42,478 nucleotides of DNA from Guillardia theta CCMP2712. Taxonomy: Eukaryota; Protista; Cryptophyta. The position numbers were made by a program, and so were the translations under genes. The first letter of the stretch is position 1. Each line of letters starts with the position of its first letter. The DNA lies in the NCBI RefSeq assembly GCF_000315625.1, contig NW_005434611.1, positions 382,046 to 424,523 on the forward strand, in the 5' to 3' direction. Below are positions 3,890 through 29,318 of the stretch, piece by piece. Under the pieces are notes generated by a model, which was given only the letters and a program-made list of their open reading frames with translations, had not been told where the DNA came from and searched no databases.

Positions 3890-4162
3890 AGCCAGCGATT
3901 AGCGTCATGCTGTCTTCCTGCCCACAACTTACAAACACGTCGCGGTCGATGCCCCAGTCCTGCGTCATGTGAATCAGGAATGGAAGAGAAAGAACATGAG
4001 GGAGAGGCAGCAAGTGGTGATGAGAGCCTAGTGATGTGATAGACAGGAAGCGAGGAATGCAACTTCAAGCCTGACGATGAGAAGGCGAGATGAGCAGGAG
4101 AAGAAGATCAGTGGGGGAAGGAGAGGAGCGAGAGAATGAAGAGAGGAGAAGGAGATAATTTT

Positions 4163-13877: not shown

Positions 13878-14250
13878 GATGAGAGGTGTGTCTACAACAG
13901 ATGATAGATGAGAAATGAGAAATGAGAGGTGTGTCTAGAACAGATGATAGATGATAGATGAGAAATGAGAGGTGTGTCTACAACAGATGATAGATGATAG
14001 ATGATAGATGAGAGGTGTGTCTAGAACAGATGATAGATGATAGATGATAGATGAGAGGTGTGTCTACAACAGATGATAGATGATAGATGAGAAATGAGAG
14101 GTGTGTCTAGAACAGATGATAGATGATAGATGATAGATGAGAGGTATGTCTACAACAGATGATAGATGATAGATGAGAGATGAGAGGTGTGTCTAGAACA
14201 GATGATAGATGATAGATGATAGATGAGAGGTATGTCTACAACAGATGAGA
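13878..14250. repeat. Compound minisatellite: 9 x GAGAGGT(G/A)TGTCTA(C/G)AACA separated by variable (GATGATA)n/GAGAAAT
   Basis: Units read directly. The C and G variants alternate. Confidence 0.95.
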
Positions 14251-14419: not shown

Positions 14420-14466
14420 CCCGCGGCCGCCGGGCCGGCCCGGGCCGGCCCGGGCCGGCCCGGCCT
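14420..14466. promoter_or_regulatory. GC-rich palindromic (CCGGGCCGGC)n box, possible promoter island
   Basis: gccgggccggcccgggccggcccgggccggcccggcc lies upstream of a minus-strand gene. Similar boxes occur at 28830, 35850-36065 and 41820-42260. Function is inferred only. Confidence 0.35.
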
Positions 14467-14604: not shown

Positions 14605-15058
14605 TCGACACCACTAGCCTGATCCAGGCGCCGTGATCAAGCGCTACAGCTCCCTTGTTCCTGCTTGTTTTGCTTGAGGCACTTTTTACCTTCTGCCAGT
14701 AAATCTTCTCTACCCCTCTCTAGTAATCCTGCAGCTTTCAAGCTCTACTGCAAACACATACTCCAAGGCCCGGGTCCTCTCCAAGGGGTCCTCTCCAAGG
14801 GAGCTCATAAACCTGGTCTCCGGCCCACCGTTATCGGGTCCGCACACCGTCGACTCGCGACGAAGCTTGCTTTGGCAGCGATTCGCTCATTTCTTGACCA
14901 GCACTTCAACCCGGCGTCTGCGCTCCTGCCTCGACAAAGTGGCAACCCGAGGACGAGCTCGCGGTGATGAGGAGGACGTCGCGAACCCCACAGTGCTGGT
15001 GAGTTTGGATGCAAAGAACGCCTTCAACTCCCTCGACCGCCCGGCCAGGCTCTCTTCG
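14605..15058 (+). pseudogene. Degenerate, internally deleted RT fragment interrupted by a 3'-tip insert (about 14654-14705)
   Basis: Matches 20211-20740 with deletions (tcgacaccactagcctgatccaggcg ... LVSLDAKNAFNSLDR). Confidence 0.85.
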
Positions 15059-15074
15059 GCGGCGGGTCTGCTGA

Positions 15075-16225
15075 CAGTTGCCAGCAGTGCTGGTTACTTT
15101 TGGTCTTGTATTTTTGTGTGTGTTTGTGCCGCTTAGCTTCTCGCTGTGCGCTGTGTGCATGCGGCTGCTGAATGTTTACTCGCAGAAGGTAAAACTTGTG
15201 CCTCAAGCAAACGAAAGCACCAGCTATGAGGAGTTTTACTCGCATAAGGGAAAAAGTGCCTCAAGCAAAAGAAAGCATGAACAAGCTAACACCAGCGGAA
15301 TAGAGTTTAACACCATGCAGGTTTAGCTTGTTCCTGCTTTGTTTTGCTTAAGGCACTTTTTACCTTCTGCGAGTAAACATCGAAGCCTGAGTCATGTGAG
15401 TTTTACTCGCAGAAGGTAAAAAGTGCCTCAAGCAAAAGATTATATAGGATTTACTGGCAGAAGGTAAAAAAGTGCCTCAAGCAAAACAAAGCAGGAACAA
15501 GCTGAACCGTGGGAGACGGATTTACTGGCAGAAGGTAAAAAGTGCCTCAAGCAAAACAAAGCAGGAACAAGCTAAACCTGCTTGCACACAGCGCACAGCG
15601 AGAAGCTGCACAAACACACACAAAACACAAGCCCGAAAAGAACCAGCACTGCTGGCTCTTGTGTCCAGCCTCCCTCCGTCCGCTGCCCCAGGCGCCGACC
15701 CCCGGGCAACGCCGCCGCTCCTTGTCGGCGGCTGCCCTTTCTCCGTCCGCGGCCGCCCGCTTTGTGGCGGCAGCGGACGTCTCGACTGACAGTGGTCAGT
15801 CGGCTGCCTCCGGGTATCGCGTCTAAGGGATTTTATTCCTCCTGCTTGCTCCTGCTGCTTGTTGCTTGATTGCTTGACCCTTAGGCTGCTTGTCTGCGCG
15901 GCTTCGCGCTTGGGCTGGCGCTGCCGCGTCTGGAAGCCCATGATGGATTTACTGGCAGAAGGTAAAAAGTGCCTCAAGCAAAACAAAGAAGGAACAAGCT
16001 AAACCTCCTGGCACACAGCGCACAGCGAGAAGCTGCACAATCACACACAAAACACAAGCCCGAAAAGAACCAGCACTGCTGCGGACGTCCGATCTCGACT
16101 GACAGTGGTCAGTCGGCTGCCTCCGGGTATCGCGTCTAAGGGATTTTATTCCTCCTGCATGCTCCCGGTGCTGCTTGTTGCTTGATTGCTTGACCCTTAG
16201 GCTGCTTGTCTGCGCGGCTTCGCGC
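15075..16225. mobile_element. Stack of short 5'-truncated 3' ends and C-terminal fragments in both orientations
   Basis: Repeated tttact(gg/cg)cagaaggtaaaaagtgcctcaagcaaaa at about 15175, 15235, 15403, 15450, 15521 and 15948, with the reverse complement at about 15358. Plus-strand SGYRV*-UTR pieces at 15660-15932 and 16081-16225. Confidence 0.9.
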
Positions 16226-22464
<6,239 letters not shown>

Positions 22465-22564
22465 NNNNNNNNNNNNNNNNNNNNNNNNNNNNNNNNNNNN
22501 NNNNNNNNNNNNNNNNNNNNNNNNNNNNNNNNNNNNNNNNNNNNNNNNNNNNNNNNNNNNNNNN
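22465..22564. other. Assembly gap (100 N)
   Basis: N run inside the retroelement cluster. Confidence 1.
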
Positions 22565-23762
22565 GCGTCTGGGTGCCAGCAGTGCTGATTCTTTTCGGGC
22601 TTGTGTTTTGTGTGTGTTTGTGCAGCTTCTCGCTGTGGACTGTGTGCCTGCCGGTTCAGCTTGTTCATGCTTTGTTTTGCTTGAGGCACTTTTTACCTTC
22701 TGCCAGTAAATCCTATACCCCTCCATGCCGCACTTTTTACCTTCTGCCAGTAAATCCTATAGCAGCATGTTGCAGCGTCTGAGAAGATTCGCAAACATCG
22801 CGCTGCATATGCCATGACTACTCCTCCTCGAGCGTTCATCCCTCTTGCCATCTCGACGGACGGTATAGGATTTACTGGCAGAAGGTAAAACGGTACCCTG
22901 CATCCTGACACCCTCCGCTTCATCTGGTATCTCGCGGACATCATTGCTCAGCGCTCAATGCCTCTTGAGGATGCGGCGTTTGGTCGGCACTTCGTGCCTG
23001 ATGACGGACCTGCTGCTGAGGTCTTGGCTCGCAAACGCGCCGCCACCTATCAGCGCCTCACCATGCAGCTGACGCTGGAGGCGCTCTTGTCTGGTGCGAG
23101 GCGCATGACGCCCTTGCGGGCGCAAGCACTTCTCGAGCCAGAGGACAGCTCCTCCTCGGACTTTGTCGAGTCGCCCGAGGAGTCTTCGCCGGAGGTCTCC
23201 GACTCCGATGGGGGACACCCTTCGAGTGGCCCCGACGATCGGCGCGGAGCTGGCGAGGCGTCTCCGTCCCTCACTGTGACGTCGGGTGCCTCCGGAGAGC
23301 TCGACACCACTGGGGTGCTTGCTGCTGGTCCGAGCTCGCCTGCTTCCTCCCCGGCATCGGTCGGGTCACGCCGGTCCTTGGGCATTGCCGCGGCGTCGCC
23401 GCCGTCACGGGCGGCTACCACTGACTTGGCTACCGCTGACTCGGAGGCTAGCGAGGAGGACTACCTCGAGCGGTACCGTGTTCCTGCGTCCAGCCTCCCT
23501 CCGTCCGCTGCCCCAGGCGGACCCCCGGGCAACGCCGGCTCCTTGTCGGCGGCTGCCCTTTCTCCGTCCGCGGCCGCCCGCTTTGTGGCGGCAGCGGACG
23601 TCTCGACTGACAGTGGTCAGTCGGCTGCCTCCGGGTATCGCGTCTAAGGGATTTTCTTCCTCCTGCTTGCTCCTGCTGCTTGTTGCTTGATTGCTTGACC
23701 CTTAGGCTGCTTGTCGGTACGGTCTGCGCGGCTTCGCGCTTGGGCTGGCGCTGCCGCGTCTG
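22565..23762 (+). mobile_element. Two 3' ends (22565-22717, 22728-22765) plus an RLE/tail/partial-UTR segment carrying a 25-nt antisense tip insert
   Basis: Matches the reverse complement of 16411-17490. SGYRV* at 23647. The UTR breaks at GCGTCTG (23762). Confidence 0.9.
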
Positions 23763-23765
23763 AAG

Positions 23766-26638
23766 TATAGGATTTACTGGCAGAAGATAAAAAGTGCCTC
23801 AAGCAAAACAAAGAAGGAACAAGCTGAACCGGCAGGCACACAGTCCACAGCGAGAAGCTGCACAATCACACACAAAACACAAGCCCGAAAAGAACCAGCA
23901 CTGCTGGCACCCAGACGCGGCAGCGCCAGCCCAAGCGCGAAGCCGCGCAGACAAGCAGCCTAAGGGTCAAGCAATCAAGCAACAAGCAGCAGGAGCATGC
24001 AGGAGGAAGAAAATCCCTTAGACGCGATACCCGGAGGCAGCCGACTGACCACTGTCAGTCGAGACGTCCGCTGCCGCCACAAAGCGGGCGGCCGCGGACG
24101 GAGAAAGGGCAGCCGCCGACAAGGAGCCGGCGCTGCCCGGGTGTCCGCCTGGGGCAGCGGACGGAGGGAGGCTGGACACATGAACACGGTACCGCTCGAG
24201 GTAGTCCTCCTCGCTAGCCTCCGAGTCAGCGGTAGCCAAGTCAGTGGTAGCCGCCCGTGACAGCGGCGACGCCGCGGCAATGCCCAAGGACCGGCGTGAC
24301 CCGACCGATGCCGGGGAGGAAGCAGGCGAGCTCGGACCAGCAGCAAGCACCCCAGTGGTGTCGAGCTCTCCGGAGGCACCCGACGTCACAGTGAGGGACG
24401 GAGACGACGGAGACGCCTCGCCAGCTCCGCGCCGATCGTCGGGGCCACTCGAAGGGTGTCCCCCATCGGAGTCGGAGACTCCTCGGGCGACTCGACAAAG
24501 TCCGAGGAGGAGCTGTCCTCTGGCTCGAGAAGTGCTTGCGCCCGCAAGGGCGTCATGCCCGCAAGGGCGTCATGCGCCTCGCACCAGACAAGAGCGCTTC
24601 CAGCGTCAGCTGCATGGTGAGGCGCTGATAGGACCTCAGCAGCAGGGCCGTCATCAGGCACAAAGTGCCGACCAAACGCCGCATCCTCAAGAGGCATTGA
24701 GCGCTGAGCAATGATGTCCGCGAGATACCAGATGAAGCGGAGGGTGTCAGGATGCAGGGTACCGTCCGTCGAGATGGCAAGAGGGATGAACGCTCGAGGA
24801 GGAGTAGTCATGGCATATGCAGCGCGATGTTTGCGAATCTTCTCAGACGCTGCAAGGTTGACCTCCCCCCACTTGGTCAGGTCGGCAGAGCTACCAATGT
24901 AAGGTATAGGATGTAAGGGTGGACCAACGTCACGTCCGCCATCAAGCCCTCGTACTGCTCGGACCCTCGATCGCGGATTCCAGGAATGTGGATATCGCCC
25001 TTCATCTTGCGGCCATGAGGATGGGAGGGTACCTGCCGTCGAGAACGAGGATCCCCCACTGTATCGATGACGCTCTGAAGACCAGCTTCGTTCAGCATCG
25101 ACCGAATCGTACGAGTAAGGTTGTCATGCGCCGTGGGAAGCTTGGAGGATCGGCGTTTGCAGGTCTGGAGATGATGTGCAGCAACGGAGGGATCGAGCTC
25201 GCGCTGACATCCATCACATTTCGTCGGACACTGGCAGATCGGCATGCCATGGAGATAGCAGTCGAGCATCTGAGCATAGCGGTGCGGGAAGGCCTTGAGG
25301 GGGTAGTAGCTCGAGACTCGCATCGGAGAGTGGCTCAGGTCTCGCTCAGGAAAATGAGCGAAGATGGTAGACTGCAAGACCCTATCCTGCGACTTGAGCG
25401 AGTGTGTCCTGCGGCTGTGCAAGGTGAGGATATCACGCTGCTGATCGGTCAGCGCAGCGCGAGCATGCACATGGCGAGGGAAGACGCGCATGACAAGAGG
25501 AGTCACATTTCGCTGCGCAGGGGGAGGAATGAAGTGCTCATGAGACGAGTCGACGAGAGCGCGCAAACCAGGGATGTGTACCACAGATGCCGGGGGGCGT
25601 CCTGCGTCATCAGGCACAGCAGCCGGGGCAGGTGGGATCGCCGCGCCATCTGCAGCCGGTGCAGGAGCCTTGACACGACGGTAGAGGATCGCTCCAGCAT
25701 TATGAACGAAGTCGTGCGCCTCAACGAAGAAGGTCGCCAGAGGATGCTTCTGGGCACGGAGAGATCTCGAGCAGTGAACGTCCAGGCTATGAGGAGAGGG
25801 CAAGGTCCGGGACATGGGCTGGTCAGAGTACCAAGCGAGGAAGCGAGCGATAGCCGTATAGTAAACAGCGGGGTGTAGACCCTCAGAGGGCGTGAACTCG
25901 TCCCCTCCCCGACTATGCGGAAGCTCCCGCTTGAACCTCGCAAACTCTAGCAGGTCGGGATGCGCGGCGAGGTACTGCGAGGAAGGCCAGCGGTGGTATT
26001 TCTCAAGCGCCAGGTGGACAGAGAGGTCAAAGCGACGAATCTGTGATTGGACCCGCGGGAGAAACGGAGAAGACCCCTGGAGGAAGAAGCGCAGCTTCTG
26101 GAGATGGCTCGCCCTCACCAGCGTCTTGAACATGAAGCCATGCTGGACGAGCCCGAGCTTCGAGAGCTCTTCGTTGAGGGTAGAAACCTTCGCTCGGAGC
26201 TGACTAGCATGAAATCCATCCGTGCCGATAGGCAGGCCGCCAAGTGTAATCCCGCCAGTGACGACCTCGAAGTGAAGAAGTTGAGTCTTGAGACGGCGCT
26301 TAAGGCTCTTCTTCAGCTGCGAGAGATCAGGGTGTTGATGCCAGGAGCTTGTGTTTTGTGTGTGTTTGTGCAGCTTCTCTCTAGCTTCAGATCAGCTAAC
26401 ATGTACTTCTTCATAGCGGACGTAGCTGCAACGGCATCCTCGAGTGGACCGACAAGCACGACGTTGTCAGCATAGGCCAAGACTCGAACAGAGGGAAAAG
26501 CTCTGCGATATGGAGGAGCAGGGGGTGGATACTGTGGCAGAAAAATACGCTGGAGGGGACATCGCCCTGACAGACGCCCGAGGTACACTGAACGGAGGCT
26601 GACTGACTTTTGTGAAAGAGTCGAAGGTCAGCAGAGTC
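23766..26638 (-). mobile_element. 5'-truncated copy with a complete 3'UTR and several small indels and inserts
   Basis: Starts on the + strand with tataggatttactggcagaag. Full UTR 23766-24017, then tail, RLE, CCHC and RT thumb through YADN (about 26470). Confidence 0.92.
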
Positions 26639-28800
26639 TGTCTAAGGGATTTTATTCCTCCTGCATGCTCCTGCTGCTTGTTAATCCTATGACTGCTCGG
26701 ACCCTCGATCGCGGATGCCAGGGATGTGGATATCGCCCTTCATCTTTCGGCCATGAGGATGGGAGGGTACCTGCCGTCGAGAACGAGGATCCCCCACTGT
26801 ATCGATGACGCTCTGAAGACCAGCTTCGTTCAGCATCGACCGAATCGTACGAGTAAGGTTGTCATGCGCCGTGGGAAGCTTGGAGGATCGGCGTTTGCAG
26901 GTCTGGAGATGATGTGCAGCAACGGAGGGATCGAGCTCGCGCTGACATCCATCACATTTCGTCGGACACTGGCAGATCGGCATGCCATGGCTGAGATAGC
27001 AGTCGAGCATCTGAGCATAGCGGTGCGGGAAGGCCTTGAGGGGGTAGTAGCTCGAGACTCGCATCGGAGAGTGGCTCAGGTCACGCTCAGGAAAATGAGC
27101 GAAGATGGTAGACGCGAAGCCGCGCAGACAAGCAGCCGAAGGGTCAAGCAATCAAGCAACAAGCAGCAGGAGCATGCAGGAGGAAGAAAATCCCTTAGAC
27201 GCGATACCCGGAGGCAGCCGACTGACCACTGTCAGTCGAGACGTCCGCTGCAGTGCTGGTTCTTTTCGGGCTTGTGTTTTGTGTGTCTCGCTGTGCGCTG
27301 TGTGCCAGGAGGTTTAGCTTGTTCCTGCTTTGTTTTGCTTGAGGCACTTTTTACCTTCCTGGCACCAACACCCTGATCTCTCGCAGCTGAAGAAGAGCCT
27401 TAAGCGCCGTCTCAAGACTCAGCTTCTTCACTGACAGTGGTCAGTCGGATGCCTCCGGGTATCGCGTCTAAGGGGGTTTCATTTCGGACGTCCCCTCCTG
27501 CTGCTCAGCTGTTACCCCTCCTACAGACTGTTGCTTGACCCTCCCTGCTTGTCTGCGCGGCTTCGCGCGTACTACGGTAGGCTGGCTGTGCCGGATCTGC
27601 CAGCCTCGGCGTGCTGGTTACTTTTGGTCTTGTTTTGTGTGTGTGTTTGTGCAGCTTCTCGCTGTGCGCTGTGTGCATGCAGGTTTAGCTTGTTCCTGCT
27701 TGTTTTGCTTGAGGCACTTTTTACCTTCTGCGAGTAAACATTCCGATTCGAGTCACTTTAAGGTCGTGACTGTCGGGATTACACTTGGAGGCCTGCCCAT
27801 CGGCACCTACTGAGGTTTGCTCGCAGAAGGTAAAAAGTGTCTTTTTTAAGCAGAAGAAAGCAGCACCGATGGTTTTCATGCCAGTCAACTCCGAGCGGAG
27901 GTCTCCACTCTCAACGAAGAGCTCTCGGCACTGCGGCACTGTTTACCGTCTTATGCGAGTAAAACTCAGATAGGCCCGCGCTTCATCTGGTATCTGGCGG
28001 ACATCATCGCTCACGGCGCTCGTTGCCTCACTTCGTTCCTGATGATGGACCTGCTGCTGAGGTCTTGGCTCGCAAACCGCGGCACGGCCACCTAAGTGTG
28101 TGCTCTATGCCTGACGGTTTTGCTTGTTGCTGCTTTCTTCTGCTTGAGGCACTTTCAAGCCTTCTGCCAGTAAATCTTCCTGCTTGCGTAAAACTCTTGC
28201 GACTCCATGCAGCTGACGCTAGAGGCGCTCCAGGGCAGTGCTGAGTTTTACTCGCATAAGGTAAAAAGTGCCGTCTGGTGCGAGGCGCATGACTCCCTTG
28301 CGCGCGCAAGCGCTCCGAGGCTCGAGCCAGAGGACATCTGAGTTTTACTCGCACATGATAAGTTAGAAAAAGCTTCAATCCTGCGGCGGGCCGGGAAGCC
28401 ACCGTGATACCGGCACAGCAGGGGACCCGGTCGGACGTCCGAGCGTGTGACGCCCTCCCGGCGAGTCTGGACATCATGACATGAGAAGCACAGCAACATC
28501 CGATCATGATCGGATAAGGAGAGGCGACGGCGTCGGCTGCAAGCAAGACATATGGGAAACTCAGAGTTTTACTCGCATAAGGTAGAAAGTGCCTAAAGCA
28601 GAAGAAAGCAGCAACAAGCAGCAACAAAAGGGGCCCGGCGCGGGCGTTTGCAACACAGCAAACGTCACGGCGTGCCAAAAAAAAAAAAGCGGCGCAAACA
28701 CACAATACACAGAGTCTGAACGACTACAACATGCACATGAGTCACTGTGGAGCACTTTGACGCCACTGAATAACTTAACTGTCACTCAAGGGCGTCATGT
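26639..28800. mobile_element. Scrambled, progressively more diverged fragments and subfamily-B 3' tips
   Basis: CCHC/RLE piece at 26691-27112 (-), UTR pieces, and gagttttactcgca(t/g)aaggtaaaa-like tips at about 27720(+), 27816, 27942(+), 28247, 28344 and 28568. Confidence 0.8.
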
Positions 28801-29318
28801 ACTACGCGATCCTCAGTGCCACTGAGTACGGTCCCGGCGGGCCGGGCCCGGGCCGGGGTTCAACGTTTCTTGGCTTAGGATGGGAGGGCCTGCTGGGCTC
28901 AGAATGGTCTGGAGGGGGGTGGGGTACCCCCTAATACCTCTCGGGCCTTATCTTCAGTTGGGATTTGGGGTAGGGTGGGGTAGGTTGCATAAAAGGACCC
29001 TCATACCCCCTGGAAATCCTTGCAATGTGTGACTTGTAAGGGGGTGGGTCTTGTTGATTCAAATATTGTCCTAGTGACATTGCCTTGTTACCACCCGTTT
29101 TGTGTGTTTGTGTGTACCCCTTCTCTTGTGCGCCGTTTGTCTCTGCACCCCTACTTGACAGCAGCAACACATAGAGATACAGACGGTGGGGGTACTCACC
29201 CCAAACCCTCGACCACCCCACCTCCATGGGGTACTACGGTGAAGTTGGTGCCTTCTTCCTTTTCTTCTATGCGTTGCTCCTTCTCCTTCCTCCACTGCGT
29301 CCCCCCAGCCCGGACTTG

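What the first reader, a model, noticed from the sequence alone, without database searches (positions are those of the whole stretch)
14605..28800. Self-targeting RLE non-LTR retrotransposon building a 14-kb bidirectional 'onion' array
Seen: the island has essentially no host sequence. It consists of one element family with more than 20 3' tips (by eye) nested into other copies in both orientations, and I saw no tip elsewhere in the window. Established: RT-CCHC-RLE elements of the CRE clade (CRE/SLACS/CZAR, Cnl1, MoTeR) usually target fixed host repeats (spliced-leader genes, telomeres) in one orientation, and Cnl1 forms nested subtelomeric arrays. Inference: this family uses its own sequence as the landing pad at an interstitial site and in both orientations, forming a self-made safe harbour or sink that may be heterochromatic or centromeric.
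Basis: partly seen in the sequence, partly recalled or inferred. Interest (0 to 1): 0.9.

Follow-up and report, generated by a model that had tools for sequence, protein, structure and literature searches.

The report
Self-nesting retrotransposon island in Guillardia
This 14-kb stretch of the alga Guillardia theta consists almost entirely of copies of one R2-like jumping gene inserted into each other, and because the family occupies only one small neighbourhood on each large scaffold, these islands are good but unproven candidates for the alga's unknown centromeres.

Summary
From 14605 to 28176, 97% of the read bases are fragments of one non-LTR retrotransposon family about 5.85 kb long. It carries 17-21 3' tips in both orientations, and no tip lies elsewhere in the window. 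The organism is Guillardia theta CCMP2712.

The nesting comes from real insertion. About 23 inserts, here and in 11 other islands, split a resident copy and carry target-site duplications, mostly 0-19 bp. The inserts are heavily 5'-truncated (24-2877 bp).

Genome-wide there are at least 607 tips on at least 97 contigs. 44 of the 60 largest scaffolds carry the family, each in one neighbourhood. Related families in the same genome are dispersed.

The protein is R2-like (RT, CCHC, restriction-like endonuclease fold). CRE-clade membership was not tested.

I found no target motif, so "own sequence as landing pad" is not shown. Regional, chromatin-directed targeting fits better. A centromere role is an inference.

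"Exactly one per scaffold" has exceptions: C1 has two patches, C2 and C4 have old relics 8-25 kb away, and C21 has a 300-bp stray.

The gap at 22465-22564 hides at least 0.27-1.1 kb, and frame across it cannot be known.

The scan already reported this phenomenon on other islands of this genome. It closely parallels Zepp clusters of green algae.

The parts
14605..15520 (.). Old left edge of the island. It holds diverged fragments (F2325-2847 on +) and about 7 short tip fragments in both orientations, including old-subfamily tips at 15233-15248 and 15400-15415.
   Evidence: Tiling. Best identity to copies in other islands is 89-95%. Old tips located.
15518..16401 (.). Pile of 3'-UTR pieces. There are three minus-strand U+tip units (15518-15656, 15945-16081, 16227-16401), separated by plus-strand 3'-UTR fragments (15657-15933 and 16093-16226).
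16227..19345 (-). Young 5'-truncated copy M1 (F2895 to tip). It has an internal 128-bp U+tip block at 17269-17396, followed by a repeat of F4758-4842. The 872-aa ORF (17277-19895) ends inside that internal tip, cutting the conserved endonuclease C-terminus after 'LAIS'.
   Evidence: The same junction is identical over more than 300 bp at C19:408798.
19346..19874 (+). CAG/GCN triplet repeat (poly-Q or poly-A, depending on frame). It belongs to the N-terminal part of the plus-strand copy and abuts the 5' end of M1 head to head.
19346..22717 (+). Young 5'-truncated copy P (F1437-4572, then the gap, then F5695-5847 with its tip at 22692-22717). It contains the 798-aa RT-CCHC ORF at 19997-22393.
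   Evidence: 99% identical to copies on C77 and C12.
22465..22564 (.). Assembly gap (100 N) inside copy P.
22730..22761 (+). 32-bp tip-only insert sitting just ahead of F4758.
22770..23762 (+). Copy P2 (F4758-5701). It is split at F4853/4848 by a 26-bp inverted tip at 22864-22889, with a 4-6 bp duplication (ACGG).
23766..26636 (-). Copy M3 (F2977-5847, 2871 bp) with an intact 3' end (x-B-U-tip). It is inserted in opposite orientation into P2 at F5701. I used it as reference R3.
26640..27251 (.). Short young fragments: F5590-5632 on +, and F4241-4659 and F5539-5676 on -.
27252..28620 (.). Old right edge. Diverged plus-strand copies (F3267-3452, F4874-5053) are each split by an old 5'-truncated insert (27430-27738 and 28108-28176). 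Old-subfamily tips lie at 27950, 28245, 28342 and 28566.
   Evidence: (87-95%).

Best explanation
The island is a nest of an R2-like non-LTR retrotransposon of Guillardia theta. The element has a single ORF of about 1500 aa with a reverse transcriptase, a CCHC knuckle and a restriction-like endonuclease. It is about 5.85 kb long, has no poly(A), and ends in ...CTTCTGCCAGTAAATCCTATA.

Shown: new copies enter by target-primed reverse transcription at nicks made inside resident copies. This splits the resident copies, and most new copies are severely 5'-truncated. The island grows from within, so its oldest copies sit at the edges.

Inferred: the target is chosen at the level of a chromosomal neighbourhood, not a DNA word. 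Most likely the element's RNP is tethered to a special chromatin state that exists once per chromosome. Centromeric chromatin is the leading candidate (my odds about 0.45) and another heterochromatic or positional mark is second. Within that neighbourhood the endonuclease nicks with only weak local preferences, which produces the hot spots.
For: Island content and tips:
- 97% of the island is one family.
- 86 of 88 usable tips in 18 islands have element sequence within 80 nt downstream.
- All 6 apparent singleton tips lie in dense element DNA.

Insertion is real:
- About 23 single inserts that end in a tip lie between collinear halves of a resident copy. Duplications are mostly 0-19 bp, and inserts are 24-2877 bp.
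- 48 of 65 3' junctions carry 1-9 extra nucleotides.
- Tip-to-internal joints occur in contigs of independent runs.

Regional targeting:
- At least 607 tips lie on at least 97 contigs.
- 44 of the 60 largest scaffolds carry the family, each in one neighbourhood.
- 19 of the 20 largest scaffolds have one. P(no scaffold with two distant islands | Poisson) is about 0.009.
- Sister RLE families (36-45% identical) are dispersed, with several loci per scaffold.
- There is no target motif (at most 0.13 bit).
- No zinc-finger, Myb or APE domain was found by Pfam in an intact 1511-aa relative.
- Old relics at C2:696 kb and C4:400-403 kb hold element sequence but only old fragments.

Age structure:
- Edges are 87-95% and the core 97-100% identical to copies elsewhere.
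- Old-subfamily tips flank young cores on C140, C84 and C72 as well as here.

Protein:
- The family profile hits R2 proteins best (9nl3, E = 2.6e-10).
- The CCHC+RLE model hits R2 first (4.4e-4, prob 1.0).
Against: - No chromatin, CENH3 or Hi-C data were available, so the tether and the centromere role are untested.
- None of the 20 largest scaffolds has telomere repeats at both ends, so 'one per chromosome' is not established.
- 16 of the 60 largest scaffolds show no island with my probes.
- C1 has two patches 24 kb apart, both with young tips.
- Same-orientation insertions dominate (46:19), and some sites are reused with different filler (F~4755, 6 times). A purely chromatin-guided, sequence-blind process does not predict either result.
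- The window's own junctions could not be confirmed one by one, because the runs are kept only as short contigs.
Confidence: 0.6

Rival explanations
1. Sequence-directed self-targeting. The endonuclease or RNP recognises features of the element's own DNA, or the element RNA pairs with homologous DNA. The family's sequence is then literally the landing pad.
For: - RLE elements are usually site-specific (established for R2, CRE and NeSL).
- Hot spots are reused independently: tip-to-F~4755 occurs 6 times on 5 contigs with 5 different fillers.
- F4853/4854, F5701/5704 and F5131/5132 are used on both strands, and F4981-83 on 3 contigs.
- There is an orientation bias of 46 same to 19 opposite.
Against: - No shared motif at 65 junctions (at most 0.13 bit per position).
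- Insertion points are spread over at least 3.8 kb of the element on both strands.
- No recognisable DNA-binding domain in the N-terminus.
- Relic patches of element sequence at C2:696 kb and C4:400-403 kb carry no young inserts in the stretches sampled. They are 78-95% diverged, so this is weak evidence.
Confidence: 0.22
2. No targeting at all. Insertions are random, are purged everywhere except one tolerant gene-poor spot, and the island is then enlarged by segmental duplication, unequal exchange or gene conversion.
For: - The genome is compact, so selection against insertions is strong.
- At least one composite junction is shared identically between two islands (window 17265-17300 and C19:408798), so units larger than one insert are copied.
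Against: - Sister families with the same enzyme set sit at many dispersed loci per scaffold, so such insertions are tolerated.
- The island is 97% one family rather than a mixed graveyard.
- About 23 split-target insertions carry their own duplications.
- Only one off-island stray (300 bp, C21:590 kb) turned up among about 97 contigs.
Confidence: 0.1
3. Assembly artefact. The nested junctions are chimeras made when a Sanger-era assembler collapsed a repeat.
For: - The islands are full of gaps.
- Bases next to the window's gap disagree with independent contigs.
- The window's own junctions were not individually confirmed.
Against: - The same kind of junction, with target duplications, recurs in 12 islands.
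- Tip-to-internal joints are present in contigs of independent runs of 2021 and 2023.
- An identical composite junction is assembled independently on two scaffolds.
Confidence: 0.03

Closest known systems
Zepp / Zepp-like LINE clusters of green algae (Chlorella, Coccomyxa subellipsoidea, Chlamydomonas ZeppL)
   Same: Both are clusters of nested, 5'-truncated copies of one LINE family. Both are GC-rich, 1.5-42 kb in size and interstitial. [quoted passage not shown]
   Different: Zepp is an L1-type element with an AP endonuclease and a poly(A) tail (my knowledge). This family has an R2-like restriction-like endonuclease and no poly(A). The host is a cryptophyte, so the origin is independent. Chromosome completeness is not shown here.
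R2 (28S rDNA-specific RLE retrotransposon)
   Same: R2 proteins are the best solved relatives of the RT by profile (9nl3, E = 2.6e-10). They are also the best match for the CCHC+RLE fold (9nl3/9dou/9nl2/8gh6). Both show TPRT-type junctions with extra nucleotides and 5' truncation.
   Different: R2 cuts one fixed 28S site and uses N-terminal zinc-finger/Myb domains. Here there is no fixed site, no motif and no such domain by Pfam. The RT motif is YADN instead of F/YADD.
CRE-clade elements: CRE1/2, SLACS, CZAR, Cnl1 (Cryptococcus), MoTeR (Magnaporthe)
   Same: They share the RT-CCHC-RLE architecture.
   Different: Those elements target spliced-leader genes or telomere repeats and sit at or near chromosome ends. 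This family is interstitial, 0.5-0.9 Mb from the telomeres of C3, C5, C7 and C12, and has no host target repeat. Phylogenetic placement was not tested.
DIRS-1 clusters of Dictyostelium and centromere-enriched retroelements (plant CRM, Drosophila G2/Jockey-3)
   Same: One retroelement family preferentially lands in its own clusters, and these mark or form the centromere of each chromosome (my knowledge).
   Different: The element classes differ (tyrosine-recombinase, LTR/chromodomain, APE LINE). In those cases centromere identity is shown experimentally, and here it is not.

Membership tests
RLE-bearing (R2-like) non-LTR retrotransposons | Non-LTR-type reverse transcriptase | tested here: met
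   Pfam RVT_1 is weak (28.2 bits against a cut-off of 29.6). A profile of 12 relatives hits R2 proteins best in the PDB (9nl3 2.6e-10, 9dou 4.7e-10).
RLE-bearing (R2-like) non-LTR retrotransposons | CCHC knuckle followed by a PD-(D/E)XK restriction-like endonuclease, C-terminal to the RT | tested here: met
   Invariant C19, C22, H35, C39, GD93-94, D114, HP119-120 and K146 in 5 relatives. The AF2 model has pLDDT 72. Foldseek's top hits are R2 proteins (9nl3, E = 4.4e-4, prob 1.0), followed by Prp8 and PD-(D/E)XK nucleases.
RLE-bearing (R2-like) non-LTR retrotransposons | No AP-endonuclease domain and no LTRs; TPRT footprints (5' truncation, variable target duplications) | tested here: met
   Pfam finds only RVT_1 in the intact 1511-aa relative P0190. 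Inserts of 24-2877 bp show duplications of mostly 0-19 bp.
RLE-bearing (R2-like) non-LTR retrotransposons | Insertion at one fixed host sequence (usual for the group, not strictly defining) | tested here: not met
   Junctions fall at many element positions, with no motif.
CRE clade (CRE/SLACS/CZAR/Cnl1/MoTeR) | RT phylogeny places the element inside the clade | not tested
   No CRE, NeSL, R4 or Hero reference sequences could be obtained by reference. Database relatives are unnamed metagenome or Guillardia proteins.
CRE clade (CRE/SLACS/CZAR/Cnl1/MoTeR) | Targets spliced-leader genes or telomere repeats | tested here: not met
   Flanks are element sequence in 86 of 88 tips. Islands are interstitial.
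Zepp-type centromere-associated LINE clusters | Nested clusters of one LINE family, one cluster per chromosome | tested here: inconclusive
   Nesting is met. The family occupies one neighbourhood on each of the 44 of the 60 largest scaffolds that carry it. However, the scaffolds are not shown to be whole chromosomes, and C1, C2, C4 and C21 have second patches.
Zepp-type centromere-associated LINE clusters | L1-like element with AP endonuclease | tested here: not met
   The endonuclease is R2-like RLE and no APE domain is found. This is an analogue, not a member.
Functional centromere | CENH3/kinetochore occupancy | not testable with these tools
   No chromatin data were available.

The most novel reading that the evidence does not exclude
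These islands are the functional regional centromeres of Guillardia theta, which would be the first centromeres defined in Cryptista. They would be built and renewed by an R2-like endonuclease retrotransposon whose RNP reads centromeric chromatin rather than a DNA site. The relic patches 8-25 kb away (C1, C2, C4) would record centromere drift.
Probability: 0.4. Interest if true: 0.75.

Novelty: new variant of a known kind. Interest (0 to 1): 0.6.

Why it matters
Centromeres of cryptophytes are undescribed in the papers I could search. These islands give about a hundred short, sequence-defined candidate sites that a single CENH3 ChIP or Hi-C experiment could confirm or dismiss.

The family would also show that a restriction-like-endonuclease LINE can adopt region-level targeting. 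That group is otherwise known for cutting one fixed DNA site. The result would be an independent reinvention of what L1-type Zepp elements do in green algae.

For annotation, the 'reverse transcriptase' gene models of G. theta (the GUITHDRAFT_* entries) are fragments of this element.

Tried and rejected
- Long open frames of 1920-2559 aa reported by the genome search are artefacts of N gaps.
- I first read 16403-19350(-) and 20776-23655(+) as arms of a local inverted duplication sharing one nested junction. I rejected this. The two tip-to-F4755 junctions differ in filler and by 2-3 nt. The U block of the plus copy reaches 25 bp further 5' than that of the minus copy. The 98-99% identity is simply the family level, since the same stretches are 99-100% identical to copies in other islands.
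- The '85-88-bp target duplication' at 17180-17482 is doubtful. The same U-tip/TA/F4756 junction with the same rare tip variant is identical over more than 300 bp on C19, where the U block is longer. A composite was therefore probably copied as a unit.
- Single-sequence searches against the PDB found nothing. Only the family profile reached R2.
- Word-based protein searches gave no named relatives outside Guillardia, so no clade phylogeny was built.
The second try gave only short contigs, so the strand, the level of any RNA and the window's own junctions remain open.
- Microhomology between tip and target is not used. Only 10 of 65 junctions allow any overlap, which is below chance.
- A KS test of island position within scaffolds against a uniform distribution is not significant (p = 0.19). 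The mid-scaffold excess (11 of 17 islands at 0.4-0.7 of scaffold length) was tested only after I had seen it.
Coordinates use two natural copies.
Full report
**Identity of the sequence.** The window is G000:C63:382046-424523 of an 87.1-Mb assembly in 669 contigs. Proteins 88-99% identical to the island's ORFs are named as hypothetical proteins of Guillardia theta CCMP2712, so the host is this cryptophyte alga.

**Observation.**
Its 16-mer core occurs 12 times. All hits lie between 14690 and 28176, and shuffles give none.
- An older tip variant (CTTATGCGAGTAAAAC) brings the count to 17 sites, and BLAST tiling adds about four degenerate ones.
- I used two natural copies as a ruler, with no consensus. 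R5 is a 5' part on C32. R3 is the reverse complement of window 23766-26636. Positions are written 'F', and the 3' tip is F5847.
- On this ruler, 13103 of 13472 read bases in 14605-28176 (97%) are fragments of this one family, in 40 pieces on both strands.
The element signal fades at about 28620, not 28800.

**The gap.** The left edge (22464) is F4572 and the right edge (22565) is F5695, on the same strand. The gap must hide between about 270 bp and about 1.1 kb, against the 100 N written. Contigs of two independent runs continue from the left edge into the normal element sequence (table 7). Continuity and frame cannot be known. Four single bases next to the gap (22385, 22392, 22418, 22421) are absent from independent contigs (table 4), so the stop that ends the 798-aa ORF at 22393 is suspect.

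**The element.**
- The two long ORFs (17277-19895 on -, 19997-22393 on +) hold a divergent reverse transcriptase (RVT_1, just under Pfam's cut-off) and then a CCHC knuckle.
- The minus-strand ORF alone continues into a GD...D.T..HP...K endonuclease motif.
- A natural intact relative, 70% identical and 1511 aa long (P0190, from another sample), shows the full single-ORF layout. It has no zinc-finger, Myb or AP-endonuclease domain by Pfam.
- A profile of 12 relatives hits R2 proteins best among all solved structures (9nl3, E = 2.6e-10).
- An AlphaFold model of the CCHC-endonuclease part (pLDDT 72) matches R2 proteins first (E = 4.4e-4, prob 1.0). Prp8 and PD-(D/E)XK nucleases follow.
- Membership in the R2-like, RLE-bearing non-LTR group is therefore supported.
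No named reference sequences were reachable.
- Neither of the two long ORFs is intact. Both copies are 5'-truncated, and the minus-strand ORF is cut inside the conserved endonuclease C-terminus (after 'LAIS') by an internal tip block.

**Is the nesting real insertion?**
- Across the window and 11 other islands, an automatic de-nesting step produced 43 candidate events. It removes each insert whose two flanks line up again.
- By my reading of the rows of that output, about 23 are clean. In these, a piece ending in the tip lies between two collinear halves of a resident copy.
- Duplications are mostly 0-19 bp, with a few deletions and two long apparent duplications. Inserts measure 24 to 2877 bp.
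- Window examples are 14654-14706, 22864-22889 (26 bp, ACGG duplicated), 23763-26639 (2.9 kb, opposite orientation), 27430-27752 and 28065-28204.
- 48 of 65 mapped 3' junctions carry 1-9 extra nucleotides, and microhomology is not used. These are footprints of target-primed reverse transcription.
- Contigs of an independent 2021 run also contain tip-to-internal joints (tables 5 and 5c), which argues against a pure assembly artefact.
- The window's own junctions could not be checked singly, because only short contigs are kept for these runs.

**Where tips lie in the genome.**
- There are 420 hits for the main tip within one mismatch, which already include 119 with the CTATG ending. There are 128 with CAYTR endings and 59 of the old subfamily. 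Backwards-read controls give 0.
- The total is at least 607 tips, on at least 97 contigs.
- Of 88 usable tips in 18 islands, 86 have element sequence within 80 nt downstream.
- Six tips that looked solitary all sit in dense element DNA.

**Distribution.**
- 44 of the 60 largest scaffolds carry the family, each in one neighbourhood. In 41 of those 44 the neighbourhood spans 21 kb or less.
- 19 of the 20 largest scaffolds (0.93-1.42 Mb) have one, and only C16 shows none.
- With 17 islands known at the time, the Poisson chance that no scaffold has two distant islands was 0.009.
- Islands are interstitial. On C3, C5, C7 and C12, which end in TTTAGGG repeats on one side, they lie 0.5-0.9 Mb from that end.
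- As an internal control, sister families 36-45% identical, some with intact 1350-aa frames, occur at several dispersed loci per scaffold and not in the islands.
- 'Exactly one' is too strong:
  - C1 has two patches 24 kb apart with ordinary DNA between them.
  - C2 and C4 have old relic patches 8-25 kb from the active island.
  - C21 has a 300-bp stray 58 kb away.
  - No top-20 scaffold has telomere repeats at both ends, so 'per chromosome' is not shown.

**Age structure.** The age measure needs no reference: it is the best identity to copies in other islands. It gives 87-95% at both edges (14.5-15.5 kb and 27.25-28.5 kb) and 97-100% in the core. Old-subfamily tips also flank young cores on C140, C84 and C72. 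Islands therefore persist and grow from within.

**How the target is chosen.**
- The 65 mapped junctions fall between F1993 and F5805 on both strands. No position from -10 to +10 carries more than 0.13 bit.
- Two features are not random. Same-orientation insertions outnumber opposite ones 46:19. Some sites recur. For example, the tip joins F~4755 six times on five contigs with five different fillers, and F4853/4, F5131/2 and F5701/4 are used on both strands.
- The relic patches on C2 and C4 contain element sequence, but only old fragments in the stretches sampled.
- Together with the missing DNA-binding domain, this favours a regional determinant, such as chromatin or position, with weak local nicking preferences. 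A sequence landing pad fits less well. The hot spots and the strand bias keep that rival alive at about 0.2.
- The centromere reading rests on the one-neighbourhood-per-scaffold pattern and on the parallel with Zepp clusters of Coccomyxa. [quoted passage not shown] I put it at about 0.4-0.45.

**Novelty.**
- I found no paper on Guillardia or cryptophyte centromeres, or on these elements, in the held library.
- The phenomenon itself is known from Zepp, DIRS-1 and centromeric retroelements.
- What differs is the enzyme class (R2-like RLE, normally site-specific) and the lineage.
- The scan's earlier follow-ups on other islands of this genome reached the same main reading.
- This report adds:
  - the dispersed sister-family control;
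  - the absence of a motif;
  - the strand bias and hot spots;
  - the fold evidence;
  - the exceptions to 'exactly one';
  - the relic patches.

Noticed in passing
window 21020-21045 (and all 12 aligned relatives): The RT catalytic motif reads YADN, not the usual F/YADD. The D-N pair is invariant across relatives only 23-37% identical (D346 and N347 of alignment A1), including multi-copy families that appear active.
   Followed up: partly
window 17265-17300 and G000:C19:408798-408834 (L076): The junction tip/TA/TGTTGCAGCG, with the rare TTTATC tip variant, is identical over more than 300 bp on two scaffolds, but the U block upstream is longer on C19. A nested composite seems to have been copied as a unit. 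The apparent 85-88-bp target duplication in the window may therefore not be one.
   Followed up: partly
window 22385, 22392, 22418, 22421: Single bases are present in the assembly but absent from contigs of independent runs. This is probably low-quality sequence at the gap edge. It creates the stop that ends the 798-aa ORF.
   Followed up: partly
window 14420-14466 and 28833-28860: Both flanks of the island carry runs of GC-rich palindromic words (GGCCGGGCCC-type). A 43-bp tandem repeat (8.6 copies, 13878-14248) lies just to the left.
   Followed up: no
L017 about 4105-4150 (G000:C12, about 877.1 kb): A tip inside the C12 island is followed by degenerate telomere-like repeats (CCTAAACC...AACCCTAAA), about 0.88 Mb from the scaffold's telomeric end.
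   Followed up: no
G000:C1:682-686 kb and 710-712 kb; C2:696 kb; C4:400-403 kb; C21:590 kb: These are second patches of the family near the main island. C1 has two patches, both with young tips. C2 and C4 have old relics only. C21 has a 300-bp stray holding a tip-to-F4478 junction.
   Followed up: partly
G000:C22:193553-197260, C31:85972-89679, C19:796730-800500: Two dispersed sister families of RLE retrotransposons (36-45% identical to this one) have open frames of 1350-1406 aa without stops. They are candidates for active elements with ordinary, non-island distribution.
   Followed up: no
L066 (Logan contig of SRR22388310), protein P0190: An intact 1511-aa ORF, 70% identical to the island family, lies on a 4961-bp contig from another sample. 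It lacks the CAG repeat and the contig ends in (GT)n. It probably belongs to a related cryptophyte.
   Followed up: partly
runs X2, X7, X8, X10-X12, X19: Lake-water, runoff and aquatic metagenomes hold 56-65% of the sampled 31-mers of this element. That is as much as the organism's own runs, which is odd for a marine alga. It could be a close freshwater relative, a feed culture or contamination.
   Followed up: no
window 19346-19874: A 529-bp CAG/GCN triplet repeat lies inside the element's N-terminal coding region. Its length and frame differ between copies (poly-Q, poly-A or poly-S), and it is absent from the 70% relative.
   Followed up: no
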